Source of the DNA: Mustelus asterias
Lineage: Eukaryota
NCBI RefSeq assembly: GCF_964213995.1
Contig: NC_135817.1
Coordinates: 53,258,001 to 53,322,000 of the forward strand
Length of the DNA: 64,000 bases
Direction of reading: 5' to 3'
This document shows positions 45,270 through 64,000 of this stretch, one piece after another; the first letter of the stretch is position 1, and each line of letters opens with the position of its first letter. Both the position numbers and the translations under genes were made by a program. A model generated the notes under the pieces. The model was given only the letters and a program-made list of their open reading frames with translations. It searched no databases and was not told where the DNA came from.

Positions 45270-48100
45270 TCTGGAAAACAAGCTAGACGAACTTAAAGTC
45301 AGACTCGCTTTTCAAAGAGAACTGAAGGAATGCTGTGTACTCTATTTCACGGAGTCGTGGCTCACTCCTGCTTCACCGGACAGTGCCCTACAACTAGAGG
45401 GCTTCTCAATCCCCCAAGTGGACTGTACAGCAGCCTCAGGCAGGGCTAAGGGAGGTGGGGTCTGGTTCCTAGTCAACACCTCATGGTGTCTAGACATATC
45501 AACACTGGTTAGTTTCTGCTCCCCGAACCTAGAATACCTGATGCTAAAATGCTGCCCTTACCACCTTCTGCAGAAGTTCACTTCTGTTATCCTGACAGCA
45601 GTTTACATCCTACCCAATGCAGATATGAAGACCGTGCTGTACAAAATGTACATCAGTACAAATAGCCTTAAGGCAAAACATCCCAAGACCTTGTTCATTG
45701 TGACCGGGGATTTCAATCAGGCCAAGCTCGAGTGTCTGGCCAAGGCACCACCAACACATCTGTTCCACTAGAGGCCCAAACATACTACATAAATATCAAA
45801 CATGTCTACTGCTTTGGCAAATCAGACCACAAGGCTGTGCTCCTGCTCCTGGCTTACAAGCAAAAACAAACAGGAGAATCCATCAAAAAAAGTCATGCGT
45901 TGTTGGTCTGAGGCATTGGATGATCTCCTATAGGACTGCTTAGTCAGTGGACTGGTCAGTATTTAAAAACTCTGCGACCAGCCTGAACAAGTACGCCACT
46001 ACAGTAACTGACTTCATGTGTAGAAGATTGTCAAAGAAGCAGATCCACGTGTTTCCCAACCAGAAACCATGAATGAACTGGGATATCCACTGCTTGCTGA
46101 AACCTAGGTCTGAGGCATTCAAGTCAGGGCAACCCTGACCTATACAAGAAAGTAAGGAGTCTAACAACACCAGGTTAAAGTCCAACAGGTTTATTTGGTA
46201 GCAAACGCCACTAGCTTTCGGAGCGGCGTTTGCTACCAAATAAACCTGTTAGACTTTAACCTGGTGTTGTTAGACTCCTTACTGTGTTTACCCCAGTCCA
46301 ACGCCGGCATTTCCACATCATGATTATACAAGAAAGCCAGATATGATCGAAGGAGATTTGTCAACGATGCCAAAAGACCATACCAGACCAAACTAGAGTT
46401 CCAGGCTAGCCACATGGACCCCAGCTGACTATGGCAAGGTCTACAAGATGAAGGCAGGTAAAATCGCTGGCACTAATGCACCCCTCCCTGATGAACTCAA
46501 TGCATTCTATGCCAATTTTGAGCAAGAGGTCAGCGAGAGCACACACTTCAACCCAGAATCCTCAGACGAACTTGTATCCGAGGTCACCATTGCAGATGAC
46601 AGAGCAGCCTTCTCAAAGGTCAACCCACGGAAAGCGACTGGCCCGGATGGGGTACCCGGATCAGCTGGCGGGGATATTCACAAACATCTTCAACCTCTCT
46701 TTACAACAATCTGAGGTCCTGATCTGCTTCAAGAAGACAACAATCATCCCTGTACCAAAGAAAAACCAAGCAGTGTGCCTTAATGACTATCGTCTGGTGC
46801 TCTTACGCCCATCATTATGAAGTGCTTTGAAAGATTAGTCATGGCACAAATCAATTCCGGTGCCTCAGACTGCCTGGATCCAGTAAGTTCACCTACTGCT
46901 GCAACAGATCCACAGCAGATGCCATCTCCCTGGCGTTGCACTCAACCCTGGAACACTTGGATAACAAAGACACCTATGTCAGACTCCTATTTATCGACAC
47001 CAGCCCAGCCTTCAACACCATTATTCCTACGAAACTCATCTCCAAATCTGTGGCCTGGGACTTAGCTCCTCCCTCTGCAACTGGATCCTGTACTTTCTAA
47101 CCCAGAGACTGCAATCAATAAGTATAGGCGACAACAACACCTCCATGATCATCCTCAACACCGGGGCCCTACAAGGCTGTGTCTTCAGCCCCTTACTATA
47201 CTCATACACCTATGACTGTGTGGCCAAATTCCCCTCCAACTCGATTTTTCAAGTTTGCTGATGACACCACTGTAGTGGGTGGGATCTCAAACAATGATGA
47301 GACGGAGTACAGGAAAGAGTTAGAGAATCAGGTGAACTGATACGGCAACAATAATCTCTCCCTCAATGTCAACAAAATGAAGGAGATAGTCATCGGCTTC
47401 AGGAAGTGTAGTGGAGGACATACCCCTGTCTACATCAATGGGGACGAAGTAGAAATGGTCGAGGGCTTCAAGTTTTTAGGTATCTAGATCACCAACAATC
47501 TGTCCTGGTTCTTCCCCCTCCACCCCCACACATGCCAACACTATAGTTAAGAAAGCCTACCAACGCCTCTACCTTCTGAGAAGATTAAGGAAATTTGGTA
47601 TGTCTGCTACCACTCTCCAACTTTTACAAATGCACCATAGAAAGTATTCTTTCTGGATATATCACAGTTTGGTATTGCTTCTTTGTCCAAGACGCAAGAA
47701 ACTACAAAGGGACATGAATGAAGCCCAGTCCATCATTCAAACCAACCTCCCAACCATTGACAATGTGGACGTTTCCAGCTGCCTCGGAAAAGCAGCCAGC
47801 ATAATTAAGGACCCCATGCACCCCGGATTCTCTCTTCCACCTTCTTCCGTCGGGAAAAAGATACAAAAGTCTGAGGACATGTACCAACCGATTGGAGAAC
47901 AGCTTCTTCCTTGCTGCCATAAGACTTTTGAATGGACCAACCTCACATGAAGTTGATCTTTCTCTCCACCCTAGCTATGATTGTAACACTACATTCTGTA
48001 CACTCTTTTCCTTCTCCGTGTACGGTATGTTTTGCCTATACTAGCGTGCAAGAAACAATACTTTTCACAGTATACAAATACATGTGACAATAAATAAAAT
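45270..48100 (+). mobile_element. Near-complete degenerate Rex1/Babar-type non-LTR retrotransposon (APE endonuclease + RT)
   Basis: Fragments [76 protein letters not shown]; stops and frameshifts; 3' tail ending caataaataaaatc. Confidence 0.85.
46153..46324. mobile_element. Penelope-derived foldback insertion (family B), nested in the Rex1 element
   Basis: Inverted arms caacaccaggttaaagtccaacaggtttatttggtagc...; 12-bp TSD TATACAAGAAAG (46141-46152, 46325-46336). Confidence 0.8.
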
Positions 48101-48268
48101 CGATAATTAGCATCAAAACTGGAACTAGTAATAAAAAGTCACCTCATATTGTTATCCACAGCGTTCTCCTGATGTCAGAGTTGTCACTGCCAGATGTTAA
48201 AGAACAAAACACGGTACATTAGAATCATGCACACGCTTATCACAAAAATGTTAAATTTAACTACTTAC

Positions 48269-48420
48269 CATTTTCTTGAAATTCTGAACGCAGATCATTG
48301 CCGTTAGCATCAAACTTATTCCCACAAAGATCATGAAGTAGCGTGCGATTTCTGGGGTGGACCAGTTAGCCGTAACTGGAGTACATAGGGTGAAATCACT
48401 TGGCTGTAAAAACTGTTCAC
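48269..48420 (-). CDS. IgSF gene exon 4: connecting peptide, transmembrane segment and start of short tail
   Basis: ttgcag|GT..ATG|gtaagt; EQFLQPSDFTLCTPVTANWSTPEIARYFMIFVGISLMLTAMICVQNFKKM. Read-through gives VSS* (TAA at 48259-48257); the next good acceptor (~48187) starts with TGA. Confidence 0.75.
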
Positions 48421-51400
48421 CTGCAAGAAATTCTTTTGATTTTCTTTAAACGGAGATTTTTACTTTAACTGGATTAATACCTTCGTCAAAATAACTAATT
48501 CAGGTCTATCATAGATATTTCCCAAGTTTCAGTGTCTTCCGATTCGTAGTTAAATGATCTGAGCGTCTTTTAATGACGGCGACTCGTGCTGCCGTAGATC
48601 AACTAGCGTAACTGAGTATCTCTTGTGACTTGAACTTCATATTTATTTTACGCGTCCGTCTTTAATCTGTGAAGTTGATTGAGCAGCAGCTTGTTAGACA
48701 AGAAAAGATACTTTGCTGTGGCAGAAGGAGGGCACGCAGTTGTGCTTTGATTCACCTATTTCAATCCGATCAATTTATTTTCCCATGTTTAATTTTAAAA
48801 AACGCACCACGTTTTCCCCACATTAGTTGTCTCGCTGATTTAAGCAAGGCGCCTCATTGCCCTCTAATATTCGTAAACTTTCAGTTTCAGTGAAAGCACT
48901 GATTAAACACCTAACTGGCTTCCAGGATAAAAGCAAATTACCGCGGATGCTGCAATCTGAAACCAAAAGGGAAAATGCTGGAAAATCTCAGCAGGTCTGG
49001 CAGCATCGGTAAGGAGAGAAAAGAGCTGACGTCTCGAGTCCAGATGACCCTTTGTCAAAGCTCTGACAAAGGGTCGTCTGGACTTGAAACATCAGCTCTT
49101 TTCTCTCCTTACCGATGCTGCCAGACCTGCTGAGATTTTCCAGCATTTTCTCTTTTGGTAACTGGCTTCCAAAGTGTGCGTCTCGGCTTCAACCTCCCTC
49201 TATTCACAGACACATTAAAAAGATTTAAAAGTTTCAATGTGACATACTCCAACAGAGACAGGCATCTAAAAGGACACTGTAGGTTTTAACGTTGGAATCG
49301 CTAACCTATCAATCTGGCTACCTGATTTTGCTAAGAATCGGGTATAGGAAGAGAAAAAAAACTATTTGGATCAATATTGTAAATTGATTTATGGAATAAT
49401 ATTACAAATTACATGAATCTGGCAATTGTATATACTAGCCAAAACTCTGTGGATCACACCATGTGAAATATTTATAAATGTCTGTAGTTTTAATTTGACT
49501 TGTATATAGATGAACAGCATCTGTCAACATATTGGGTGATTTTGTAGACACTGAGCTACAAATGGAGAATCAATTGTTTTCTGGATCTCAGGTAAAGCTT
49601 TAGGAGGTTCTGTACGGTTACCTTTTAAAGGTTAAAATTAACCGACTTGCACACTAGCAGCATGTGGAATCTGTTTATCTACACGTTATTCCAGAGTCAG
49701 TTTCATTTACTGTTTGGCTATCTATACTACTTTCCATCTGCTCAGTTTTTTGTCCAGGTTCCTGACCATCTCTATGTCTCAGTTACTTGCCTTCCTCTGG
49801 GAACACGTCTTTGCCCACATTTCTGCCCACTTCACCCACTGGACACGTATCAAGTTCACTCGTTACCAAATACATTGTTCACTCTCTAATTTTTCTTTGT
49901 ACTGCATAGACAACAAACTCTTCCATGGGAAATGTATATTTTAAAAATTTAGGGCTTGGATTAGGCTGGATGTTTCTCCTGACAAATTGCCAAAGTTGTG
50001 AGCAGCCTGTTTATTTCAATTAGAGGTGTATTCCAGAATAACGTGGGACCATTCTCGTTCTCATCTTAGGGGGAACGCTGTTGGAGGGAACTCGACCACT
50101 TTTACTGCAGCATCTTTCAATCATAGAATCCCCAGAGTGTAGAAGGAAGCTATTCGGCCCATCGAGCACACACACACACACACATAAAATACATCTTAGA
50201 ATTCACACAGTAAAAATTGGGGCTTCTCACAAATAGGCAGTATTTAACCATCGTCCTCATCCTGTTATAGCTCTAGTAAAATACTTCATTGAGCAAACGT
50301 TATCTAAGTATATGCTTGATGAATATGGGACAGAAATGCATTTTTAAAACACCATGGTTCATTTTTGATTCAAAAAATGTTTGTTTTAAAATAAGATTAC
50401 AGTCTGTACTGATCTGTGTATCTTTTCAATAAATATCACCCGAGTATCTGCTCGCGAACAGGAATCCGCCGGAAAAAGATTACCATCCTGCTATATTCCT
50501 GATGTAAACATTTCAAACTGAATTCACTGCACTACCACCTCCTTGAATTGAACTGAGGTGTACCAACTAGACCAGCACTGGAAGCCTATTCAACACAACC
50601 TCCTTATCAATTTTGAACCCCTCAACAGAGCTTCCTTGTCTGTCTCCATGGCTTGGGTAGCAACTACCTCAGTAAAAATGATGTAAAGTATTAATTTAAT
50701 ACTTCAGCCATGCCCCCACAGTCCATGTGTAAATTTGCTTTTTTGTCCCTAATGGGCCCTACTCCTTTTACCATCATTTTATTACTTACAAGCCTATAGA
50801 AGACGTTGCAATTCCAGAGAGACAAAGCAATAGGAATAGGAGTAGCCCATTCGGCCCTTCGAGCCTGCCATTAATTATGATCATGACTGATTATTCAGCC
50901 CACTAGCCTATTCCCTCCTCTTCTCCCCATCCCTTAATTACCTGCTGCACTTATAAACCAACCTTTTGCGATTCTTGCACAAGGACACCCAGATCGCTCT
51001 GCACAGCAGCATGCTGCAATTTTTTACCTTTTAAATAATAGCCCATTTTGCTGTGCAGTTTCTCCTCATCGCAATCGTAAATATCCTCAGAGTGACTCCT
51101 GGTTCTAGACTCCTCAGCTATTGGGAACATTCTTCCTGCATCTACCCTAGCCCTGTTAGAATTTTATAGGTTTCTATGAGATCCTACCCCCCCACCCCCC
51201 CCCCCCCCCCCCCCATTCTTCTAAACTCCAGTGGACGTAACCCTAACCAACTCAATCTCTCCTTGTACGTCAGTTTCGTCATCCCAGGAATCTGCGCTCC
51301 CTCTACAGCAAGAACATCCTTCCTCAGATAAGGAAACCAAAACTGCATGCAATATTCCAGGTGTGGTCGCACCAAGGCCCTGTATAATTGCAGCAAGACA

Positions 51401-54400
51401 TTCCTGCTCCTCTACTCGAATCTTCTCACTATGAAAGCCAATATGCCATTTCCCTTCTTTACCACCGGCTGCACCGGCACACTTACCTTCAGCAATTGGT
51501 GTACGAGGACACCTAGGCCTTATTGCACATTCCCCTCAATCTAGTCATTCAGATAACAATCTGCCTTCCTGTTTTTGCTCCCAAAGTGGATAACCTCACA
51601 TTTATCCACATTATACTATGTCTGCCATGCATTTGTCCACTCACTCAGCTTGTACAAATCACACTGAAGCATCACTGTATCCTCCTCACAGCCCATCCTC
51701 CCACCCAGCTTTGTGTCATCTGCAAATTTGGAGATATCACATTTAGTTCCCTACTCTAAATCTTGTGTATATGGTGAATAGTTGGGGTCCACAGATTTCC
51801 TATAATGCTGAAGGAGGCCATTCAGCCTATCGAGTCTGCACCAATTCTCTGAAAAAGCATCTTACCTAGGCCCAACCTCCCATCCTATCCCCGTAACCTC
51901 ATGCACTTACCATGGCTAATCCATCTAACCAACATATTTTGGGACACTAAGGGACAATTAAGCATAGCCAATCCACCTAACCTGCATATCTTTGACTGCG
52001 GGAGGAAACCAGAGCACCCAGAGGAAACTCACTCATACACAGGGAGAACGTGCAAACTCCACACAGACAGTTACCCAAGGCTGGAATTGAACCCGAGCCC
52101 CTGGTGCTGTGAGGCAGCATGCCGCCCAGCAGTGATCCCTGCGGTACCCCACTAGTCACTGCCTGCCATTTGGAAAAAGACGTGTTTATTCCTACTCTTT
52201 GTTTTCTGTTTGCCAACCAGTTTCTGTCCATCTCAATACACTGACCCCAATCCTACGCGCTTTAATTTTACAAGCTAAGCTTTTATGTGGGACTTTGTTG
52301 AAAGCCTTCCAATGGTCCAAATAAACAACATCCACTGGCTCCCCCTCACCAACCCTACTAATTACCTCCTTGAAGAATTCCAGTGGATTTATCAAGCATT
52401 TTTCCTTTTCTTAAATCCATGCTAACTCTGTCCAATTCTGCCATTGTTTTCCAAGTGCTGTGTTATTAAATCTTTTATAATAAACTCTAGAATTTTCCCC
52501 ACGACCAACACCAGGCTGACTGGTCTATAATTCCCTATTTTTCTCTATCTTCCTTTTTAAATAGTGGAGTTACATTAGCTAACCTCCAGTTTGTAGGAAC
52601 AGATCGAGAGTAGAAGATTTTGGAAGATGACCACAAATGCATCCATTATTTCTAGGGCCACTTCTCTGGGATGTTGATTATCAGGCCCTGGGGATTTGTC
52701 TGTCTTCAGTCCCATCAATTTCCCCAACACCATTTCCCTAATAATACTGGTTTCCTTCCATTCTTCCCTCTCGCTAAACCCTGTGCTCCCCAACATTTCT
52801 GGTATGTTATTTGTGTCGTCCTTTGTGAAGACAGAAACAGAGTATGTATTTAGTTGGGGTCAGTAATTTATTTGTTCCCTATTCTAAATTCCCTTGTTTC
52901 TGACCATAATTGATCTTCACATAACTATAGAAACTTTTACAGCCGTTTTTTATGTTCCCTACAAGCTTACTCTCTCTCTATTTTTCCCTTCTTAATCAAT
53001 CATTTTGTCCTCCTTTGCTGAATTCTAAACTATTCCCAATCTTCAGGGCTGTTGTTTTGTTCTGGTCAGATTGTATGCCTCTTCCTTGGATCTAATACTA
53101 TCTCTAATTTCTTTCCTAAACCATGGTTTGGCCAACTTTTCCATTTTATTTTTGCACCAGATTGGAATGAACAAATGTTGTGGTTCACCAATGTGCTCTT
53201 TGAATGTTTGCCAATGTCTATCCACCGTCATCCCTTTAAGTAATGTTTCCCAATCCATCATAGCCAACTCACACCTCATGCCATCGTAGTTTCTTTTAGA
53301 TTCAGGACCCTAGTCTCAGATTCAACGACGCCACTCTTATGAATAATTCTATCATATTATGGTCGCTCATTCCCAAGGGGCCTTACACAACTTAATCCCA
53401 ATCTTTTCTCATAATCCCTTCCGCTTCTCTCGTGCTTTTTCACCTCCCCTCTGAACCTTCTGTATTCCTCATCATTCATTAATAGGTTTTCTACCTGACA
53501 CCTACCATCAGCACACTTTCTCTTCCTGATCTTAATTTCGATCTCCTTTTTAATTTATCTGAATCACTTACCCCAACTGTCACTGAAACTTATCCTCACT
53601 GGCTCAGAGAGTGTGATGTGTTGAACCTCACAAATGACGGCGGCTCCCTGGTCCCAGTGAGCGTCTGTAATCTGCAGCCGGGAGCTCAGGTTGTAGCTGC
53701 TGTCACTGTTTACTGTCAGCGAGCCCGGTTCGGTTTGATAGGAAACAACTCCCTCTACAATCCAGGAAATGCTCAGATTACTGGGAAAAAATCCCGCAGC
53801 CAAACAAATCAGAGATTGAAGTCCAACAATTTCTTTCTGGGGATCCGCAGAGAGAGAGATTTCAGGTTTGGCTAAATGAACAAAATAAAAAAAACAGATT
53901 CCATCAATCTTCGTTGTTGCAAATACACAGAGAACGACTGTAGAAAAGATTTAAACTTCTACAAGTTTGATAAAAACTGCAGAATCTGTTTGATTAATTA
54001 CAAAACAGGGAAGGAAAATGCAACGCGCATGAAATAAGATCCATAACAATAATATAAATATTATCCAGTGACCTTATAATAAGTGTAATTGGGGCACAAA
54101 TTCAGTTTGTGTTTTTTGGAGCCGCATTGTTAATGAAATGTAAAAAAAAGATAATTATTTCACAAAGACCAGTTTCTCTCCCTGCAATCCGCTTGTTAAA
54201 TAAATGATATTCCGTTGTTAGGACTGGTGTCAGTATAACACAACTTTGTCTTTTGGCCGTTTTTCTTCAAACTAAGTTTTGAAGATGATCTGAAAGTCCC
54301 TGTTGTTTAATGGTTATTGTGACATTAAAGCTAAAAGCGGGTGTGTTCACTCTGGTCCCAGTACACAGAGCATGCCACTTCAGGTTAGATTTCTGTTTTT

Positions 54401-55624
54401 TTCTCTCACATATCGTGCTATTTCAGTGTCTCTTAATCTAATCGGTGAATCACAGAATGGTTACAGCACTGGAGGCGGCCGTTTGGACCATTGTGTCCAT
54501 GCGGCACAACTCAGTTAGTCCCGCTCCAGATTTTTACAGTAGTCACGAATATGTACGCTCTTACCGCCAAATTTTATTTTCCATCAGGATTGAATTTGCC
54601 CCCACCACACTCTCCGGCAGTGTATTCCACACTAAGAAAAATATAAATTCCTCTGTGACCTCTGCTATTTTTGACATTGGTCCTAAATCGGTATTCTATG
54701 GTACTGGACACTGCCTCCAATGAGAATAGTTTCTCCCTATCTCCTCCGACCAGAACCCGGAGCAAAAGCTATTCACTGGGGATGCCAGAACTGGAAGAAG
54801 GTAGAGATGTAACCATTTAAAAGTTTATTAGCAAGGTCATCTATCTGAAATGTTAACTCAGTGTCTGTCTCCACAGAGGCTCAGTAAGAAGTCTCACAAC
54901 ACCAGGTTAAAGTCCAACAGATTTATTTGGTAGCACAAGCCACTAGCTTTCGGAGCGCTGCTCCTTCATCAGGTAAGTGGGAGTAGCGCTCTGAAAACTA
55001 GTGGCTTGTGCTACCAAATAAACCTGTCGGACTTTAACCTGGTGTTGAGAGACTTCTTACTGTGTTTACCCCAGTCCAACGTCGGCATCTCCACATCCAC
55101 AGAGGCTGTCAGAGCTGCTGAATATTTTCTGTTCTTATTTTCTAATTACCTTGAATGTTCAGTTTTGTTGCTTCTCCTACAAACATTTTCAAGGGCAGAG
55201 TGTCCTTTCTAAGAACCACGCAGTGGTAAGTGTCGGAATCGTCCAGAATCACCTGCCGAATGACAAGTGAACCCTCAGATGGAGACAGGCGAGAGCTTTT
55301 CGTGAGGAAATTCTTGGATCCGTCGCTTCTGATGTTCAGGTTGTCTCTTGCCCTACACCAATAATATTTAATCACATCCACCCGCTCCTCTCTGGGTATC
55401 AGGGTGCAATTCATTCGAGCTGTCTGTCCTGTCAGGAGAAACAGAACTGAAGGAAACTGAGTCACATTCAGACCGACAACAGGTCCTGAAACATAAAATT
55501 ATAACATAGGAACATTAAACCCAAATAATCTGAGTACAACTGGAATTACTGATAGCTGGAGTCCAAGTAAATCCTTACCTAAGACAAAGAGGCAGAGTTT
55601 GAGGATCTTTCTAACTGCACCCAT
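48269..55624 (-). CDS. Non-rearranging antigen-receptor-like IgSF membrane protein (leader-VJ-C1-connecting peptide-TM), ~278 aa, 4 exons
   Basis: Exons 55624-55579, 55485-55150, 53871-53572 and 48420-48269 join through phase-1 GT-AG introns into one uninterrupted frame with V-set, C1-set and TM signatures. Confidence 0.85.
48925..49158. mobile_element. Penelope-derived foldback insertion (family A)
   Basis: Near-perfect ~95-bp arms centred on gtcaaagctctgac; 13-bp TSD TAACTGGCTTCCA (48912-48924, 49159-49171). Confidence 0.8.
50830..53390 (-). mobile_element. Degenerate CR1-type LINE with nested SINE, in the C1-TM intron
   Basis: [44 protein letters not shown]. Confidence 0.85.
53572..53871 (-). 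CDS. IgSF gene exon 3: C1-set domain
   Basis: tttag|CC..G|gtaagt; KPEISL..SLICLAAGFFPSNLSISW..NSDSSYNLSSRLQI..W..VICEVQHITLSEP (GFxP and CxVxHxxL motifs). Confidence 0.92.
54882..55095. mobile_element. Penelope-derived foldback insertion (family B) in the V-C intron of the IgSF gene
   Basis: Same family as 46153; 12-bp TSD TCCACAGAGGCT (54870-54881, 55096-55107). Confidence 0.8.
54941..54975 (-). ncRNA. Minimal hammerhead-ribozyme-like motif (PLE-associated)
   Basis: UAC-CUGAUGA-A-GGAGC-AGC-GCUCC-GAA-AGCU-A-GUG: intact core boxes, 5-bp stem II, palindromic stem III. Confidence 0.55.
55150..55485 (-). CDS. IgSF gene exon 2: V-set domain with germline-joined J-like strand
   Basis: tttcag|GA..G|gtaatt; LNVTQFP..GQTARMNC..YYWCR..SLVIRQVILDDSDTYHC..FVGEATKLNIQ. 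Confidence 0.92.
55579..55624 (-). CDS. IgSF gene exon 1: signal peptide
   Basis: ATG at 55624; MGAVRKILKLCLFVL(G); 46-nt exon, donor G|gtaagg, 93-nt intron; same layout as an Ig/TCR V-gene leader. Confidence 0.85.
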
Positions 55625-55684
55625 CCCTCTCACCGGTACTATAGAGCTGTTGGTTATTATGAAGAAAGATCACTGGAAGAATAT

Positions 55685-55709
55685 TGTGGTTGTAGCGCCC
55701 GGTACGTCA
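55685..55709 (-). promoter_or_regulatory. Candidate proximal promoter motifs of the IgSF gene: RUNX site (TGTGGTT) and CRE-like TGACGTAC
   Basis: Motifs lie 60-85 bp upstream of the ATG; short motifs that could be chance matches. Confidence 0.3.
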
Positions 55710-56253
55710 CCTCACTTGTCATTCAGGAGGCGCTTGTGGACAATTTCAACATTTACCACTGCCTGACTCTTAGAGAGGGAGGTCCTGCACCCTGGAAAAC
55801 CTTTACAGGACAAGGAACAGAACTGACACCAAGATAATTAGATTAACTCAAACTGAAATCGTTCAATGAATGGATCAAGGAATCTTCCTGTGTTTCTAAA
55901 ACAGTGCATAATGAAAGTGCTTAAAACCTGAGCTTCTGACTGGAGATTTCAGACACTGGGAATGGAGACTCGTCAGTGAGGAAAAGTTTCAGGCACTTAG
56001 TATAGATTTGATTTGATTGTCACAGATATTGCATACCGTGAAAAGTATTGTTTCTTGTGCGCTGTACGGAGTTCATACGGAGTGTTTTATTTGCATATGT
56101 AACCAACTCCCCACGACTTTCATAATACTCCCACAGTGAACCTCAATGACATATCTCTTTCTCCTGTGCAATTTTGAAGTCTATATTGACTTTACTAGAT
56201 CCTACATATTTTTACAGGTGGGAACACTGTTGATGTGGAATGGGCCTTTGTGT

Positions 56254-57046
56254 TGTTGTACCTGTTAATTCTCAGATACTTTCAACCAGTTTACTTACTC
56301 CAAGGTTTTACCCCGGTGTCCTTATTTGCAAGATGGACAAAGGACAAACACAAATAAAGGTTCAATAAGTTTATTAATAATAACACTATTAACCCTTAAA
56401 TTACCCATATAAAACAAGAGGATACCCCAGATTCAAGTATACTACCCGTAAAGATGGTTTGGTTGAACTGCAGGCCCGATTCTCTGAGTCCCTCTGGTCC
56501 GTTGTCACGAAGGTGAGTCTCGATGACAGCTTCTTCCTTCCTTCTTTCCTTCTTCGGTCAGTCTTCCGAATGGGCAAGGCCGCCTCCTTCGTCGAGTCTT
56601 CGCTCCTGTGTGTCTCACAGTTTGTCCCTTTATCCCCCAGCCTGCTTGCCTTTCCAGAAACTTCTCTGGTTTCCGGCCAATGAGGTCCCAGGAGGGGGTT
56701 CCAATACCCAGTGGGTTTCTTGATGTCTGCCTGACAGGACACCAGGATCCGCCCCCAGGTGTCCCATCTCCCAGGAACTTTCGGTGACGGAAAATCTGGA
56801 CTGATCTGGGCTTCTAACAATAGGCCGGTGCATTTCAATGGGGTGCAATGATCTCCTGCTAAGTATCAAGTAGAGTGTAACGACCATTGATGGGTGGTTG
56901 ATGGGCCAGGCCCAGACACGTTTGTGCATTTGTATAATTGGCCTGCCTGAGGTTTGACTGTGTTTGATTTTTAATATGCCCAATTCTTTAATTTAGGATA
57001 TCCAATTTTATCAGCCTTAAAACTAGGCCCTGTCTATATCACCACA
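56254..57046 (-). mobile_element. Solo LTR (Gypsy/ERV-like)
   Basis: TG...CA termini (tgttgt...accaca); 4-bp TSD GTGT at 56250-56253 and 57047-57050; AATAAA followed by a T/G-rich tract near the minus-strand 3' end (~56370). Confidence 0.7.
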
Positions 57047-58975: not shown

Positions 58976-60307
58976 ATAACTGGCTGAAGCATGTTCTATA
59001 TCCCAATGGTAGAATGATTTCAGTATATACCGATAATATAATCTCCACTCATTTCTCAACGAGATGGTCACCCAGTTACTTTTCCAACAAAGTAACTGAA
59101 AATCAATTACCTTCACTTTCTACCACATTTTCACAGCTAGAGATGAGGACACCTTGGTGCAGAACTTTACTATGTGTTAGTTTTTTCAGCGACTTTGTAG
59201 CAATGCCAGTGGGAGTTGGGGGCATGGTGACTGGGTGATAACATTTATTAGAACATCATATTGGTTAGATTATATTTTGCTCCTACAATGAATGTACTCC
59301 TTTTCTCTTGTGTTACTTGTATAAATCTGTTCAACACCCATTGACTGCCTGTTTCTCTGGAGAAACTGTGCACTTTGGTTAGAGATGTTGCTCAACGCCA
59401 GCATGCAATGTCCATAGCAAAAAAAAAGTTAAAAGGACAGGAAATGTAAAATAACTGGAGGTGACTAGTTTGTGGACTACAGTTGTATTTTTTTCTCTTA
59501 TACGGTATTTAAAAGCTCAGTCTGAACAAAATCTATCAGTTTGTGGTGAACATGTAGGCCTAACCACTTAAAAGCCTATAGATACTGGGCATAGCAGACC
59601 CAAGAGCTATCTGACAAAAATATAGCAGCAATTTGAAACTTGTGAATGTTTAGTGTAGGCTGGTGACTATGGCATGTGACCAAACTGAGTGCCGCAGGTA
59701 TGTACAGTGGTTTTAAAATCGCCATCTATCTGAAATGTGTAACACATTGTTCAAAGGGATGAGACCACAAGTGTTCACATAAACAACATTATTCTGTGTC
59801 TTACTGAGTTCTAGTTTTAAAAAAAATAGAATTGTCATTGGCTGAATTCTTAACAGAAAATCAGGAGGGGTGACCCACATAGTTTTCTCGACAACGCCAC
59901 TTTATCCGTTATCACAAATTAACGTTCAAGTTAAAGTGGAAGGGAAAAGTGCCAAAACCATTGGTCACCAGTTGGTCAATATAATAAACTTTCTTCACAG
60001 CGTACTATTCTTGGAAGCATTAGGAACTACTCAAAATCATCACAGTATGATGACAATGTTCTTTAGTAAAAATGTTTTTGAAAAGTGCAGCAACTTATTG
60101 AAGAATGTAAACATATAAAACATTAGCATCATTTTCTCCTAGGTGGAAACTAAATTGATAAAATTATTGGAATCTATATTATTGCTCCCACAATAGGAAA
60201 CATTCTTTCCACATCAATCCTCTCAAGACCCCTCAGGAGCTTATTTGTTTCAATCAAGTCACCTCTTCCTCGTCTAAACTCCTGCAAATACAAGCCTATC
60301 CTGTCAA

Positions 60308-60889
60308 ACCCCCCACCCCCCACCCCCCACCCCCCACCCACCCACCCCCATCCCCCCCCCCCACCCACCCCCATCCCCCCCCCCCCACCCACCCCCATCC
60401 CCCCCCCCACCCACCCCCATCCCCCCCCCACCCACCCCCATCCCCCCCCCACCCACCCCCATCCCCCCCCCACCCACCCCCATCCCCCCCCATCCATCCC
60501 CCCCCCCATCCATCCCCCCCCATCCATCCCCCCATCCATCCCCCCATCCCCCCCCCCCATCCATCCCCCCCCCCCCACCCCATCCATCCCCCCACCCCCC
60601 CCCCCATCCATCCCCCCACCCCCCCCCCATCCATCCCCCCACCCCCCCCATCCATCCCCCCACCCCCCCCCATCCATCCCCCCACCCCCCCCCATCCATC
60701 CCCCCACCCCCCCACCATCCATCCCCCCACCCCCCCCATCCATCCCCCACCCCCCCCATCCATCCCCCCACCCCCCCCATCCATCCCCCACCCCCCCATC
60801 CATCCCCCCACCCCCCCCATCCATCCCCCCACCCCCCCCCCCATCCATCCCCCCACCCCCCCCCCATCCATCCCCCCCACCCCCCCCCA
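60308..60889. repeat. C-rich low-complexity satellite (CnATCCAT / CnACCCA units)
   Basis: Directly visible; runs into the gap. Confidence 0.95.
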
Positions 60890-61089
60890 NNNNNNNNNNN
60901 NNNNNNNNNNNNNNNNNNNNNNNNNNNNNNNNNNNNNNNNNNNNNNNNNNNNNNNNNNNNNNNNNNNNNNNNNNNNNNNNNNNNNNNNNNNNNNNNNNNN
61001 NNNNNNNNNNNNNNNNNNNNNNNNNNNNNNNNNNNNNNNNNNNNNNNNNNNNNNNNNNNNNNNNNNNNNNNNNNNNNNNNNNNNNNNNN
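60890..61089. other. Assembly gap (200 N)
   Basis: Exactly 200 N, typical of a fixed-size scaffolding join. Confidence 0.99.
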
Positions 61090-62003
61090 CACTCGCCCTC
61101 CAAACCAGCATTGGCAGCAGCGCTCAGTCACCACTGCTGGAAGCTTTTACAACCTCTCGTCCCAGGGAAAAAATCCTGATCTTTGGTTAATCCAGCCTCC
61201 CTGTTTTCGATTGGTGGGTGAGTGGGTGTGCAGACCCCGCTGGTTAGTTTGCCTGGCTGTCAATCACAAGAAAAGTTAGGGAATGTTTGAAAGTGACGAA
61301 TTTGGGAGAAAGGTTTTCAGGTTTTTGTTGGAAATCTCTTCCCTTTGGAAATTTTAATCTGGACTAATTTAACAGTTCGTTGTTATGTGACTGTAGCAGA
61401 ACTTGACTTTGCACAATGAGGATTTAAACAACAGGGAAAGTATAGAGAAACAAAGTTGCGGAAAGTTGTCGGAGTTCTAGTTGAGTAAAGAACGGGGAAT
61501 GCGTTGGGGCTTGAGACTAGAAAAAGTTTGACTTATATTTAGTAGGAAGACGTTCGAACGGTGTAGTTTGATACTATATAGTTGGTGGCCTACATTATAA
61601 TATTGAAAAATGCCTGTAAATTAAACGATTAATCACAAAGTAGTTGGAAACTTAACAGCTTTGATCGTTTGACAATTTATACGAATTAATTAAAAGTACT
61701 AGTGTGAATTAACACGCTGCGGCTGGCGACATGACTTGAATTTTTAATCGTCTTTATTAGGAATTTGCCTTGATGTTGTAGAGAAAAAGAGTGGAGGGAT
61801 TTAAAATATGAAATACATATTCTCTACCCTGTAGATCAATAGACAGCTGTAGCATAAATCAAAAGTATTTAAAATTCAGATTTAAAATCTTATTTAACTA
61901 TTGATATCAACCAATTAGGATGCTTGATTTTTTTGGATGTTAAGATCTTTAATATATTTGGGATTTAGGAAACTGAATTAGATTTAGTGTGTGTTGTCCA
62001 AAA

Positions 62004-62461
62004 ATGTCGGAGAGTCAGGGAAAGTTTTTTGCACCATGCTCGACAAGTTCAGAACCTCCAAGGAGCTGTAGAACAAAATGCTTGAGCTGTAAAGACGTTT
62101 ACACCGATCCCAAGATCTTACCTTGCCTCCATACGTTCTGCCTGGACTGTGTGAGAGGCTTGGAGCAGTTCTCCGTTCCCAGGACACAGGGGGAAGGTGA
62201 GTCTGGATCCGGGGGATCACTAGACTGCACTGAACCTGGGGCCTGCATCCTGTGTCCAGTCTGTGATTATGAGGTGCAGGTCCCCGCTGCTGGTCTGCGA
62301 GGCCTGACCAGTAATCACCTGATTCTCAATGAAGTTCTGCTGGAGAATCTGAAGAGATCCGACTGCAGGATAGTCTGTGATCTTTGTAACGATGGAAATG
62401 CTGAAAGAAGGTGTCACATCTGCTCAACAAATCTCTGTGACTTCTGTTCAAAAGCGCACAG
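62004..62461 (+). CDS. TRIM45: Tripartite motif-containing 45, first coding exon (RING + B-box 1); remainder beyond window
   Basis: MSESQGK..CLSCKDVYTDPKILPCLHTFCLDC..LEQFSV..ILCPVCD..LTSNHLILNEVLLENL..VCDLCND..RCHICSTNLCDFCSKAHR, donor AG|gtaag; matches recalled TRIM45 exon 1 and its synteny with TTF2. Confidence 0.92.
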
Positions 62462-64000
62462 GTAAGATCTCGGGTCATTGCGATTTTGCTGCAATCTCAA
62501 AACTTTGTTCATTGCACAGAGCAATAATTCTAGTGAACTGTACTATCGATAGAGATTTCACTTGTTAAAAGATCAACTGTGTGTGTATGTATATGACATT
62601 TAATGTAATAAAGTGTCCCAAGGTGTTTCACATTGGGCATTATAAAACAAAGTTTAAACCCAGTCACAAAAGCAGATAATGGGACAGATAATCTAAACCT
62701 TGGCCACACGAGTAGATTTTAAAGAGTTCCTTAAAGAAAGAAGGTGAAGGAGAGAGGTTTAGGGAGGGAATTTCAACGTTTTGGTTCAGGCAGCTCAATT
62801 CACAGTTAAAGTTTAAAGTTAAAGTTTATTTATTAGTCACAAGTAAAGCTTACATTAACACTTCAATGTAGTTACTGTGAAAATTCCATAGTTGCCACAC
62901 TCTGTTCAGGTACACTGAGGGAGAATTTAGCATGGACGATGCACCTAACCATCAATCAACTGTGGAGCAATTAAAACTGGGGATGTTCAAGAGGACTGAA
63001 TTAGAGCAGCACAGATATCTCAGAGGGTTGTGGGTCTGGAGGAGATGACAGAGGTAAAGAGGGGACAAAGCCATGGAGGGGTTTGAACACAAGAATGCAA
63101 ATTTTAAAAGAGGGGTTTAACCTGAGCCAATGTAGGTCAGCAAGCAGCGGGTGATCGGTGAATGGGACGTTAGAACATGGGAAGCAGAATTTTGGATGAG
63201 CTCATGTCTATGGAGCAGCCAGGGTGAGACAGAATATTGAAACCTCATGGTAACAAAGTCATGGATGACAGTTTCAGTATCAGAGCTGGAGCAGGGATGG
63301 AGTAGGATGATGTTGTGGAAGTTGAAATCGGCGGTCTAAGTGATGGTGCAAATATGTAGTCAGAAGCTCATCTTGGGGTCACGTGTCACACCAAGACTGT
63401 GTACGGTCTAGTTTAGTGTAGGACAGTTGCCTGGGTGAAGGATGGAGTTAAGCGTGAGAGAGTGGAGTTAGTGGCAGAGACTAAAGACAATGATTTTGAC
63501 CTTTCCAATATTTAGTTGGAGAACATTTCCTCTCAACTACCACTAGACACGGATCTGACAGTGCAACAGGGGCCAAGCGAGGTGGTGGGAATGTAGTCCT
63601 GGGTGTCATCAATGTACATATGGAAACTGGCATTGTTTTTACATGATGCTGTACCTGCATGCTGACATTTTGTGTTTCATGTACAAGGACACCCAGATCC
63701 CTCTGTATCATAACATTCTGCAGTCTCTTTCCATATGAATAATGTTCTGCTTTGCTTTTCTTTCTACTAAAGTGGATAATCTCAAATTTCTCCCCCCTAG
63801 CAAAATTCTGCCGCATATGTAATCTATCTTCATCCCTTTGTCAGAAAATTTGGCTACAATACACTCAGTCTATTCATCCATGTCATTATATAGATTGTAT
63901 ATATTTGAGGCTCCCACACTTGTGGTCCTCCAGAAGTTACAGTTTGCCAAGCTGAAAATGACCCATTTATCTGGACTGCTTTCTTTTCTGTTAGTTAGCC

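What the first reader, a model, noticed from the sequence alone, without database searches (positions are those of the whole stretch)
48257..55624. Non-rearranging, TCR-chain-like VJ-C1 receptor gene between TTF2 and TRIM45
Seen: four exons splice into one intact ~278-aa frame with the layout of a rearranged TCR chain: 46-nt leader + 93-nt intron, one V domain ending in a J-like strand, one C1 domain, then a connecting peptide with a single Cys, a TM and a very short tail. There is no recombination signal at the V end, so the gene is germline-joined. Established: C1-set domains are largely confined to Ig/TCR/MHC/tapasin/SIRP/B7-type proteins. Non-rearranging VJ(-C1) genes are discussed as relics of the pre-RAG antigen-receptor ancestor. 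As recalled, human has no protein-coding gene between TTF2 and TRIM45, though the region is IgSF-rich (CD58, CD2, CD101, VTCN1). Inference: this is an invariant antigen-receptor-like molecule of cartilaginous fish, possibly undescribed. I cannot exclude that it is an ortholog of an already reported VJ-C1/PRARP-type gene.
Basis: partly seen in the sequence, partly recalled or inferred. Interest (0 to 1): 0.92.

Follow-up and report, generated by a model that had tools for sequence, protein, structure and literature searches.

The report
Shark antigen-receptor-like activating receptor gene
A shark gene built like an unrearranged T-cell-receptor chain is real, but it is best read as the activating partner of an inhibitory twin, one member of a little-studied receptor family of sharks and rays.

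Summary
The four minus-strand exons are there. Pfam calls a V-set and a C1-set domain, and no RSS is present.

The gene is not a lone invariant receptor. It belongs to a family seen here only in cartilaginous fish, which NCBI auto-names "SIRP/SHPS-1-like" or "Ig kappa-like".
- Most members carry the same leader, VJ and C1 on an uncharged TM and a long tail with ITIM/ITSM-like motifs.
- A minority, this gene included, end in a short-tailed TM with a conserved Arg, placed 6 residues before VGISL.
- That Arg-TM is shared with Scyliorhinus torazame, Pristis and Hemitrygon models.

The closest relative is a Mustelus asterias ITIM form: 89% identical in V, 96% in C1, with an unrelated TM and tail. 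Its exons lie in the same DNA runs as window-identical contigs but not in the window.

The family V profile sits nearest TCR Valpha/delta, shark NAR and IgL V domains. The C1 sits nearest Ig C and UrIg2 domains. SIRPalpha gives the best contiguous V-C1 alignment shown.

Best reading: an activating paired receptor, presumably coupled to an adaptor.

Unproven points:
- No RNA run exists.
- The exon 4 acceptor is ambiguous, so the hinge Cys is uncertain.
- The TTF2 and TRIM45 names were checked only to family level.

First-stage notes of this scan list similar genes elsewhere in this genome.

The parts
55579..55624 (-). Exon 1: ATG and the first 15 1/3 codons of a split leader (46 nt), followed by a 93-nt intron (55486-55578)
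   Evidence: The donor is GTAAGG. The leader is identical over its 15 whole codons to that of P0041 (Mustelus asterias).
55150..55485 (-). Exon 2: end of the leader plus a complete V domain with a J-like G strand (VJ in one exon). Cys26, Trp42 and Cys88 are present, with an extra Cys43.
   Evidence: Pfam V-set E 5.4e-9. 89% identical to P0041 V. The V-only family profile is nearest TCR Valpha, VNAR, Vdelta and lambda V. The acceptor follows a TTTATGTTTCAG tract and the donor is GTAATT.
53572..53871 (-). Exon 3: one C1-set domain (Cys22, Trp36, Cys80; Y-N-L-S-S-R-L and C-E-V-x-H motifs)
   Evidence: Pfam C1-set E 1.9e-15. 96% identical to P0041 C1. Of the three PDB hits whose domains were printed, UrIg2 C1 (9dmx) has the best single domain, at 41.7 bits.
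48257..48420 (-). Other in-frame acceptors lie at 48432, 48375 and 48351.
   Evidence: From residue 17 on it is homologous to the C-terminus of P0053 (22/32 identical, E 7e-14). From residue 18 on it is homologous to the TM of P0039 (15/28, E 3e-9). It has no similarity to the P0041 TM or tail.
48287..48349 (-). Predicted transmembrane helix (exon-4 residues 24-44) with Arg at its third position (codon 48341-48343)
   Evidence: Hydropathy. The Arg lies 6 residues before VGISL in the window gene, P0039, P0052 and P0053.
55712..55834 (+). Head-to-head remnant of a family V exon (strands E-G with a J-like end). It is not part of the live gene.
   Evidence: tblastn E 1.9e-7 to P0002. Inverted repeat with 55204-55270, 67 nt, 81%.

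Best explanation
This is an intact, germline-joined gene. It encodes a split leader, one VJ-type V domain, one C1-set domain and a short-tailed transmembrane segment with a conserved arginine.

It is the activating-type member of a paired receptor family of sharks and rays. Its sister genes carry almost the same ectodomain on an uncharged TM and a long tail with ITIM/ITSM-like motifs.

Shown:
- the exon structure and the domains;
- the family;
- the near-identical ITIM twin in what is most likely the same species (Mustelus asterias or a close relative);
- conservation of the Arg-TM module across Mustelus, Scyliorhinus, Pristis and Hemitrygon.

Inferred from how other paired receptors work (SIRPbeta/SIRPalpha, activating and inhibitory KIR, PIR-A/B, NKp30/46; my own knowledge):
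- The membrane arginine pairs with the aspartate of an ITAM adaptor such as FcRgamma, CD3zeta or a DAP12-like chain.
- Binding of the same or a related ligand would then trigger the cell, while the ITIM twin recruits SHP phosphatases and dampens it.
- The V domain is the ligand-binding face.
For: **Gene anatomy.** GT/AG at all three introns and an intact frame. V-set and C1-set domains. No RSS.

**Family.**
- The V exon, searched against 1.84 billion representatives, gave 37 hits at E<=1e-3.
- Four of the five hits at E<=1e-10 (P0001, P0002, P0003, P0005), plus the partial P0017 at 3.5e-6, are close relatives at 42-63% identity. The fifth (P0004) is a 3295-aa multi-Ig protein at 22%.
- All named members are chondrichthyan.

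**Paired forms.**
- All 10 long forms scanned carry 1-4 [SIVLT]xYxx[IVL] motifs after the TM. Both short forms scanned carry none.
- The window holds no match to P0041 residues 229-369, its TM and tail.

**Arg-TM module.**
- Exon 4 vs P0053 (S. torazame): 22/32 identical, E 7e-14.
- Exon 4 vs P0039 (Pristis): 15/28, E 3e-9.
- Exon 4 vs the ITIM form P0041: E 41.

**Ectodomains follow lineage, not TM type.**
- Window V and C1 pair with Mustelus P0041 (support 100/99 in both trees).
- Pristis P0039 and P0038 show one mismatch across the aligned ectodomain.
- S. torazame has both TM types behind one leader type.

**Twin in the same DNA runs.** The contigs include a second copy about 96-98% identical over the pieces laid. 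Its listed letters give the P0041 residue at 11 of 12 V differences and 3 of 4 C1 differences.

**V is the diverging part.**
- 17/336 nt differ in V, against 15/647 in flanking non-coding DNA (Fisher p 0.035) and 3/300 in C1 (p 0.005).
- 10 of the 12 residue changes lie where CDR1, CDR2 and CDR3 sit by position (positional inference).

**Not one-sided decay.** Of the 16 window/P0041 differences, the window keeps the family-majority residue at 5, P0041 at 7, and neither at 4.
Against: - **No transcript evidence.** Neither of the two runs that hold the stretch is on record as RNA. The 3->4 junction and expression are unproven.
- **Not annotated.** The gene has no product in the protein collection, although its twin from M. 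asterias does.
- **No nearby poly(A) signal.** No AATAAA or ATTAAA follows the stop on the minus strand for 2061 nt. The last codons overlap a good donor-like GTAAGT, so a further exon is possible.
- **Ambiguous acceptor.** The exon 4 acceptor is uncertain.
- **J motif change.** The second Gly of the J-like G-x-G is Ala here. It is Gly in 11 of the 12 other family rows.
- **Depth.** Window-identical contigs have about half the depth (6-14) of the P0041-like contigs (17-24). The gene may sit on only one haplotype of that animal.
- **Untested.** No adaptor, ligand or expressing cell type was examined.
Confidence: 0.7

Rival explanations
1. First reader's reading. This is an invariant, TCR-chain-like antigen-receptor relic. 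It pairs through its hinge Cys with a second chain, signals through CD3-like partners, and descends directly from the pre-RAG VJ-C1 ancestor.
For: - The layout matches a TCR chain: split leader, VJ, one C1, a basic TM residue and a very short tail.
- The V profile is nearest TCR Valpha/delta, NAR and IgL V. No SIRP V is among the 60 best hits.
- The C1 is nearest Ig C and UrIg2 domains.
- The split leader is described as a hallmark of antigen-receptor genes in PMC12227049 (section 7 read).
Against: - The same ectodomain sits on tails with ITIM/ITSM-like motifs in most family members.
- The hinge Cys is missing in P0039, P0052 and P0053, and may be spliced out here.
- No partner-chain gene was seen in the window.
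- The J-like G-x-G bulge, important for V-V pairing (my own knowledge), is altered in this gene.
Confidence: 0.08
2. A recent, silent or decaying duplicate. A copy of the promoter-to-C1 part of the ITIM gene landed beside an old Arg-TM exon, and the frame is intact only because the copy is young.
For: - No RNA run exists and no annotated product was found.
- No nearby poly(A) signal.
- Half-depth contigs in the DNA runs.
- G-to-A change in the J motif and R-to-W at the C1 end.
- dN/dS is 0.77 in V, and 3 non-synonymous against 0 synonymous changes are listed in C1.
- A dead V remnant lies next door.
Against: - All four exons are open and all six splice-site dinucleotides are canonical.
- The Arg-TM module is conserved between sharks and rays at 54-69% identity, with the Arg in register. 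That is not expected of an unused exon.
- Derived changes are spread over both twins.
Confidence: 0.15
3. A true orthologue of mammalian SIRPbeta, that is, a member of the CD47-binding SIRP family proper, as NCBI's automatic names suggest.
For: - NCBI names family members 'SIRP beta-1-like' or 'SHPS-1-like'.
- Of the five PDB hits whose domains were printed, SIRPalpha (2wng) gives the best contiguous V-C1 alignment with the family profile: 70.1 bits, against 60.1 for a kappa chain. It keeps the G-x-G-T-E-L-x-V-x-A-K-P junction.
- The paired ITIM / charged-TM logic is the same.
Against: - There is one C1 domain rather than two. Two-C1 batoid forms exist but are internal duplications.
- No SIRP V domain is among the 60 best hits of the V-only profile.
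- A light chain reaches 90.9 bits and UrIg2 127.8 bits in total with the full profile.
- NCBI names other members 'Ig kappa-like' or 'Ig heavy chain Mem5-like'.
- The TM residue is Arg, not Lys.
- The locus lies beside SNF2 and TRIM genes. The human SIRP cluster is on 20p13 (recalled, not tested).
Confidence: 0.07

Closest known systems
SIRPbeta / SIRPalpha paired receptors (mammals)
   Same: - A non-rearranging V domain with a J-like G strand, followed directly by a C1-set domain. The junction motif matches that of SIRPalpha in the profile alignment.
- Inhibitory members with ITIM-type tails and activating members with a short tail and a basic TM residue.
- Near-identical ectodomains within a species.
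   Different: - One C1 domain, not two.
- Arg, not Lys, in the TM.
- The V domain is not specifically SIRP-like.
- Seen here only in cartilaginous fish.
- A different genomic neighbourhood. The human SIRP location is recalled, not tested.
TCR chains / IgL chains (rearranging antigen receptors)
   Same: - Split leader, VJ-type V, a single C1, a basic residue in the TM and a minimal tail.
- The V profile is nearest TCR Valpha/delta, NAR and lambda V.
- The C1 is nearest Ig constant domains.
   Different: - V and J are one exon with no RSS.
- Sister genes carry ITIM tails.
- The hinge Cys is not conserved.
UrIg and UrIg2 (non-rearranging shark VJ-C1 genes; PMC12227049, sections 4 and 7 read)
   Same: - Elasmobranch, with a single-exon VJ, a split leader and C1-type domains.
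- UrIg2 C1 is the best single-domain PDB match shown for this C1 (41.7 bits). UrIg2 is the top hit of the family profile (127.8 bits).
   Different: - UrIg has three C1 domains and is secreted. UrIg2 has nine or more C1 domains.
- They are linked to the MHC and to the Ig/TCR complex respectively.
- The paper has no occurrence of 'ITIM' or 'SIRP'.
NKp30 (NCR3) and other Arg-TM activating Ig receptors
   Same: A non-rearranging VJ-type V domain, an Arg in the TM and a short tail. NKp30's features are recalled. NCR3 is named as an MHC-linked VJ gene.
   Different: NKp30 has no C1 domain and no ITIM twin (recalled).
PRARP genes (Fu et al. 2019, J Immunol; cited in PMC10751288)
   Same: [quoted passage not shown]
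   Different: Could not be compared. The paper is not held and no PRARP sequence was available to me.

Membership tests
Rearranging antigen receptor chain (TCR/IgL) | V and J are separate segments flanked by RSS (heptamer, 12/23 spacer, nonamer) | tested here: not met
   V runs through the J-like strand to a splice donor within one exon. No RSS-like site was found in 53000-56300 on either strand.
Rearranging antigen receptor chain (TCR/IgL) | Split leader, VJ-type V domain and a single C1-set domain | tested here: met
Rearranging antigen receptor chain (TCR/IgL) | Membrane-proximal Cys for an inter-chain disulfide | tested here: inconclusive
   The Cys is present only if the acceptor at 48420 (or 48432) is used. 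The acceptors at 48375 and 48351 skip it. It is absent in P0039, P0052 and P0053.
SIRP family | V domain followed by two C1-set domains | tested here: not met
   There is one C1 exon and no second C1-like exon in the window.
SIRP family | Paired inhibitory (ITIM) and activating (basic TM, short tail) members with similar ectodomains | tested here: met
SIRP family | V domain specifically related to SIRP V (the CD47-binding domain) | tested here: not met
   No SIRP chain is among the 60 best of 322 PDB hits of the V-only profile, nor among the 60 best of 120 for the V exon alone.
SIRP family | Orthologous location and CD47 binding | not testable with these tools
UrIg / UrIg2 | Single-exon VJ with split leader, non-rearranging | tested here: met
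.
UrIg / UrIg2 | Three or more C1-type domains | tested here: not met
   One C1. UrIg has 3 and UrIg2 has 9-11.
UrIg / UrIg2 | Linkage to the MHC (UrIg) or to the IgH/TCRalpha-delta complex (UrIg2) | tested here: inconclusive
   Within the 64 kb only an SNF2 helicase gene and a TRIM RING exon flank it. Wider linkage could not be seen.
PRARP | Sequence relationship to chicken PRARPA/B | not testable with these tools
   The paper is not held. No sequences were available. Searches found only a citation.
NKp30-type activating receptor | Single VJ-type V domain joined directly to a stalk and an Arg-TM, with no C domain | tested here: not met
   A C1-set domain lies between V and TM. The Arg-TM feature itself is met.

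The most novel reading that the evidence does not exclude
The family would be a third, membrane-bound lineage of non-rearranging VJ-C1 genes in elasmobranchs, beside UrIg (MHC) and UrIg2 (Ig/TCR complex). It would sit in the chromosome-1-type MHC paralogous region, next to the TTF2/TRIM45 counterparts.

It would preserve the state of the antigen-receptor precursor before the RAG transposon arrived. That state is an innate paired receptor: a TCR/NAR-like VJ domain and one C1 domain, signalling either through a basic TM residue and an ITAM adaptor (as TCR chains still do) or through ITIMs.

The Arg-TM, short-tailed gene in this window would then be the closest living analogue of a pre-rearrangement TCR chain.
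Probability: 0.15. Interest if true: 0.85.

Novelty: new variant of a known kind. Interest (0 to 1): 0.55.

Why it matters
Genes with an unsplit VJ exon joined to a C1 domain are sought as witnesses of what the RAG transposon invaded (PMC12227049, PMC10751288). UrIg and UrIg2, the two shark examples in print, are multi-C-domain molecules.

This family has the minimal V-C1-TM layout of a TCR chain and a V domain that scores nearest TCR/NAR V domains. It comes as activating (Arg-TM) and inhibitory (ITIM) twins.

If the family is old and lies in an MHC paralogous region, it links antigen-receptor origins to innate paired receptors. That link could then be tested in sharks by looking at adaptors, ligands and expressing cells.

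If it is only a lineage-specific SIRP-like expansion, it is still a clean non-mammalian case of ectodomain homogenisation with V-domain divergence between paired receptors. It is also a gene that current annotation misses.

Tried and rejected
- **RNA evidence.** The look-up of sequencing runs returned two runs of one sample, neither on record as RNA. Read laying could therefore only show DNA contigs.
- **Structures.** There is no fold search, and the placement of residues in CDR loops is by position only.
- **Genomic context of homologues.** Synteny in other species and the twin's locus could not be read.
- **Atlas.** Closed for new sequences.
- **Outgroups for a phylogeny.**
  - The family-profile search of the protein collection returned only family members: 14 hits at E<=1e-8 among 8000 scored candidates.
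  - No V or C1 tree against SIRP, TCR, IgL, UrIg or NKp30 was built. PDB profile rankings were used instead. Those rankings favour multi-domain chains.
- **Naming TRIM45 and TTF2.**
  - PDB gave only TRIM2 and TRIM56 RING hits and generic SNF2 hits.
  - The last protein search, with the RING exon, found nothing because of the length window.
- **Idea that P0041 is this same locus with a different 3' end: rejected.** Its residues 229-369 have no match anywhere in the window.
- **Idea of VTCN1/B7-H4 (neighbour of TRIM45 in human, very short tail): dropped.** Pfam prefers C1-set over the CD80-like C2-set (1.9e-15 against 0.003). No B7 chain appeared among the best hits.
- **Literature.** Searches found no description of this family.
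  - The UrIg 2023 paper (PMC10530332) and the PRARP paper (PubMed 30770416) are not held.
- **Joined model.** The joined four-exon model was never assembled, translated or searched. The exons were searched apart, and whole-protein searches used natural database homologues.

Full report
**1. What is in the sequence**

Reading the minus strand gives four exons:
- a 46-nt exon from the ATG at 55624 to 55579;
- a 93-nt intron;
- a 336-nt exon, 55485-55150;
- a 1278-nt intron;
- a 300-nt exon, 53871-53572;
- a 5151-nt intron full of repeats;
- a 164-nt exon, 48420-48257, ending in TAA.

Every intron begins GT and ends AG, and every junction is in phase 1. The sum is 846 nt, or 281 codons.

Each exon was translated and searched by itself.
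- Pfam finds V-set in exon 2 (E 5.4e-9) and C1-set in exon 3 (E 1.9e-15, well above the CD80-like C2-set at 0.003). It finds nothing meaningful in exon 4.
- The V exon has the Cys26-Trp42-Cys88 framework and ends in a J-like strand before the donor. The V end is therefore germline-joined.
- A scan of 53000-56300 for heptamer/nonamer pairs at 12 or 23 (+-1) spacing found none.
- Exon 4 has one strongly hydrophobic stretch with a single Arg at its third residue, followed by nine residues and the stop.

**2. It belongs to a family, and most of the family is inhibitory**

The V exon was searched with phmmer against 1.84 billion representative proteins. It gave 37 hits at E<=1e-3 and five at E<=1e-10.
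- Four of those five (P0001, P0002, P0003, P0005) and the partial P0017 (E 3.5e-6) are close, at 42-63% identity.
- The fifth (P0004) is a 3295-aa multi-Ig protein at 22% identity.
- The rest are generic Ig hits.

Look-ups and two further searches with natural homologues brought the family to some twenty proteins.
- The species are Scyliorhinus canicula, S. torazame, Mustelus asterias, Heptranchias, Heterodontus, Stegostoma, Hemiscyllium, Cetorhinus, Pristis, Hypanus, Hemitrygon, Mobula and Narcine. One further entry comes from MetaClust, with no organism given.
- All named members are cartilaginous fish.
- NCBI's automatic names differ from species to species: 'SHPS-1-like', 'SIRP beta-1-like', 'Ig kappa light chain-like', 'Ig heavy chain Mem5-like' and 'uncharacterized'.

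The sequences show the same leader, VJ and C1. Some rays have two C1 domains. In most members an uncharged TM follows, then a tail of about 100-130 residues.

All 10 long forms scanned carry one to four [SIVLT]xYxx[IVL] motifs in that tail. The two short forms scanned carry none.

**3. The nearest relative is an ITIM twin**

P0041 of Mustelus asterias has the same 15 leading residues. It is 99/111 identical in V and 95/99 in C1. It then continues with a different TM and a tail carrying ITIM/ITSM-like motifs. Neither has any match in the 64-kb window (tblastn), so P0041 is encoded elsewhere.

The only public runs that hold the stretch are two DNA runs of one sample. Laid on 53400-55900, they show two kinds of contig:
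- contigs identical or nearly identical to the window;
- contigs of a second copy, about 96-98% identical over the pieces laid, running from about 55714 through leader, V exon and intron 2 to the C1 exon.

Translating the listed variant letters gives the P0041 residue at 11 of the 12 V differences and 3 of the 4 C1 differences. The other two may be among the 28 differences the tool did not list.

The window therefore most likely comes from M. asterias or a very close relative, and twin and window gene coexist in one animal's reads.

Window-like contigs have depths of 6-14 and the P0041-like contigs 17-24. I cannot tell whether that means the window gene sits on one haplotype only.

**4. The Arg-TM module is old**

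The translation of exon 4 aligns as follows:
- with the C-terminus of P0053, a partial S. torazame model: 22/32 identical, E 7e-14;
- with the TM of the short Pristis protein P0039: 15/28 identical, E 3e-9 (tblastn against the window 9e-5);
- not with the TM of P0041 (E 41).

The short Hemitrygon protein P0052 aligns with P0039 through the same segment. In all four sequences the Arg lies six residues before the motif VGISL.

S. torazame also has a fragment with the ITIM-type TM behind the same kind of leader (P0054).

The ectodomains do not group by TM type:
- In maximum-likelihood trees of the V and C1 columns, the window exons pair with Mustelus P0041 (100/99 in both).
- The Hemitrygon Arg-TM form pairs with the Mobula ITIM form in V (100/99).
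- Pristis P0039 and P0038 show one mismatch across the aligned ectodomain before diverging at the TM.

An old split of TM modules with young, species-specific ectodomains is the usual picture of paired activating/inhibitory receptors whose ectodomains are homogenised by gene conversion or repeated duplication. That last step is an inference.

**5. Weak points of the gene model**

- **No RNA run exists**, so no junction is confirmed directly. The V-to-C1 junction is supported by the many database models that read straight through it.
- **The C1-to-exon-4 junction is less sure.**
  - The acceptor at 48420 has 9 pyrimidines in the 20 bases before the AG.
  - In-frame acceptors also lie at 48432 (8/20), 48375 (14/20) and 48351 (12/20).
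  - Homology to P0053 and P0039 begins only at exon-4 residues 17-18. The models of P0039, P0052 and P0053 have only a few linker residues and no Cys.
  - The 'connecting peptide with a single Cys' may therefore not be in the mRNA.
- **The 3' end is unclear.** No AATAAA or ATTAAA follows the stop on the minus strand for 2061 nt. The last codons overlap a donor-like GTAAGT.
- **No annotated product.** None exists for this gene in the protein collection.
- **Change in the J motif.** The second Gly of the J-like G-x-G is Ala here, and Gly in 11 of the 12 other rows.

Against decay:
- The frame and all splice-site dinucleotides are intact.
- Of the 16 residue differences from P0041, the window keeps the family-majority residue at 5, P0041 at 7, and neither at 4.

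**6. Where the twins differ**

Counting the listed differences of the second copy:
- The V exon differs at 17 of 336 nt.
- Flanking non-coding DNA differs at 15 of 647 (Fisher p 0.035).
- The C1 exon differs at 3 of 300 (p 0.005).
- Nei-Gojobori dN/dS is 0.77 in V (dN 0.049, dS 0.064). The list is incomplete, so these are rough figures.

Both dN and dS exceed the intron divergence. That fits a V exon with an older history than its flanks at least as well as it fits positive selection.

Ten of the twelve residue changes fall in three places: between Cys26 and Trp42, in the 54-63 stretch, and between Cys88 and the J motif. By position, these are where the CDR1, CDR2 and CDR3 loops of antigen-receptor V domains lie. 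No structure could be predicted to check this.

**7. What it resembles**

| Query | Result against PDB sequences |
|---|---|
| V exon alone | Only weak hits, best E 0.002: CD4 D1, TCR alpha, CD8 beta, NAR |
| V-only profile of seven family members | TCR Valpha (34.5 bits, aligned through the J), shark VNAR (34.0), further Valpha, a shark antigen receptor, TCR Vdelta1, lambda V, CD8 beta; no SIRP V among the 60 best of 322 |
| C1 exon alone | Of the three hits whose domains were printed, UrIg2 C1 has the best single domain: 41.7 bits, against 36.1-36.7 for IgG CH3-type domains |
| C1-only profile | Ig heavy chains and UrIg2 lead; SIRPgamma appears at 77.5 bits |
| Whole-family profile | UrIg2 highest in total (127.8 bits, three C domains); of the five hits printed, SIRPalpha gives the best contiguous V-C1 alignment (70.1 bits, against 60.1 for a kappa chain) and keeps the G-x-G-T-E-L-x-V-x-A-K-P junction; one light chain reaches 90.9 bits in total |

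The V is antigen-receptor-like and the C1 is Ig/UrIg-like. The V-C1 junction and the signalling logic are SIRP-like.

I could not fetch outgroup sequences to build trees, so membership in any of these families is open. Features that fail a membership test are listed in the table of tests.

**8. How it most likely works**

Shown: the ectodomain, the Arg-TM with a minimal tail, the ITIM twin, and the conservation.

Inferred from the behaviour of other paired receptors (my own knowledge):
- The Arg near the outer end of the TM pairs with the Asp of an ITAM adaptor such as FcRgamma, CD3zeta or a DAP12-like chain. This is needed for surface expression and signalling.
- The twin's phosphorylated ITIM/ITSM motifs recruit SHP phosphatases.
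- The two compete for related ligands through their V domains.

The ligand, the adaptor and the expressing cell type are unknown.

**9. Surroundings**

- On the + strand, exons with SNF2 motifs I, DEAH, TGTPIQN and the QxxDRxxRxGQ block lie at 19073, 24067, 24151 and 38771.
- Two + strand AATAAA at 48089 and 48130 lie about 130-170 nt from this gene's stop. The two genes probably converge.
- A + strand RING/B-box exon lies at 61989-62465.

First-stage notes of this scan are unchecked and were not tested by me. They list a second Arg-TM VJ receptor about 32.6 kb beyond the window's end, and many VJ-C1-ITIM genes and one tail-to-tail ITIM/Arg-TM pair elsewhere in this genome.

**10. Novelty and verdict**

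- The two shark non-rearranging VJ-C1 genes in print, UrIg and UrIg2, have three and nine or more C domains. The UrIg2 paper has no occurrence of 'ITIM' or 'SIRP' (PMC12227049: sections 4 and 7 read, plus term search).
- The MHC paper names UrIg, NKp30 and PRARP as the known unsplit VJ genes (PMC10751288, passages).
- My eight literature searches found nothing on this family. Much of the field's literature is in journals not held, and supplements were closed.
- The kind of system, a paired receptor on a non-rearranging VJ-C1 ectodomain, is known from SIRP. This is therefore a new variant of a known kind, not a new category.
- It is more interesting than a routine IgSF gene for three reasons: its V is nearest TCR/NAR V domains, its layout is the minimal TCR-chain layout, and it may sit in an MHC paralogous region.

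Interest: 0.55.

Noticed in passing
window 55712-55834 (+): A remnant of a family V exon (strands E to G with a J-like end) lies head-to-head about 90 nt upstream of the live gene's ATG. It forms a 67-nt, 81% inverted repeat with 55204-55270. Its donor position reads AT instead of GT. The similarity of the second (P0041-like) copy to the window ends at about 55714, right at this remnant.
   Followed up: partly
window 48962-49159 and 54882-55062: Two near-perfect hairpin repeats lie in introns 3 and 2. The first has 99-nt arms, 94% complementary, with no spacer. The second has 83-nt arms, 93%, with a 15-nt spacer. The second belongs to an extremely high-copy element: summed contig depth in the DNA runs reaches the millions. 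It looks like a MITE/SINE-type element.
   Followed up: partly
window 48257-48432 (-): Exon 4 has four in-frame AG acceptors: 48432, 48420, 48375 and 48351. The one at 48375 has the best pyrimidine tract and gives the linker length seen in ray and catshark homologues. Alternative use would give forms with and without the Cys and the N-W-S site.
   Followed up: partly
window 48089-48135 (+) and 46195-48256 (-): Two + strand AATAAA signals, probably the end of the SNF2 (TTF2-like) gene, lie about 130-170 nt from the receptor gene's stop codon. On the minus strand, no canonical poly(A) signal follows that stop for 2061 nt. The 3' ends converge and may overlap.
   Followed up: no
window 53400-55900, DNA runs X1/X2: Window-identical contigs have about half the depth (6-14) of the contigs of the P0041-like copy (17-24). 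No window-identical contig was listed over most of the V exon. This could be a presence/absence or highly divergent haplotype at this locus.
   Followed up: no
window 60174-61134: A run of N (masked or a gap; not touched) sits beside a G-rich simple repeat. In translation the repeat gives long Gly/Trp/Asp-rich ORFs on the minus strand, about 0.9 kb upstream of the RING exon. It looks like a low-complexity artefact of ORF listing, not a gene.
   Followed up: no
proteins P0053 and P0054 (Scyliorhinus torazame): Two fragmentary gene models carry the Arg-TM and the ITIM-type TM respectively behind the same type of leader. The activating/inhibitory pair therefore exists in a catshark too, but is only partly modelled there.
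   Followed up: partly
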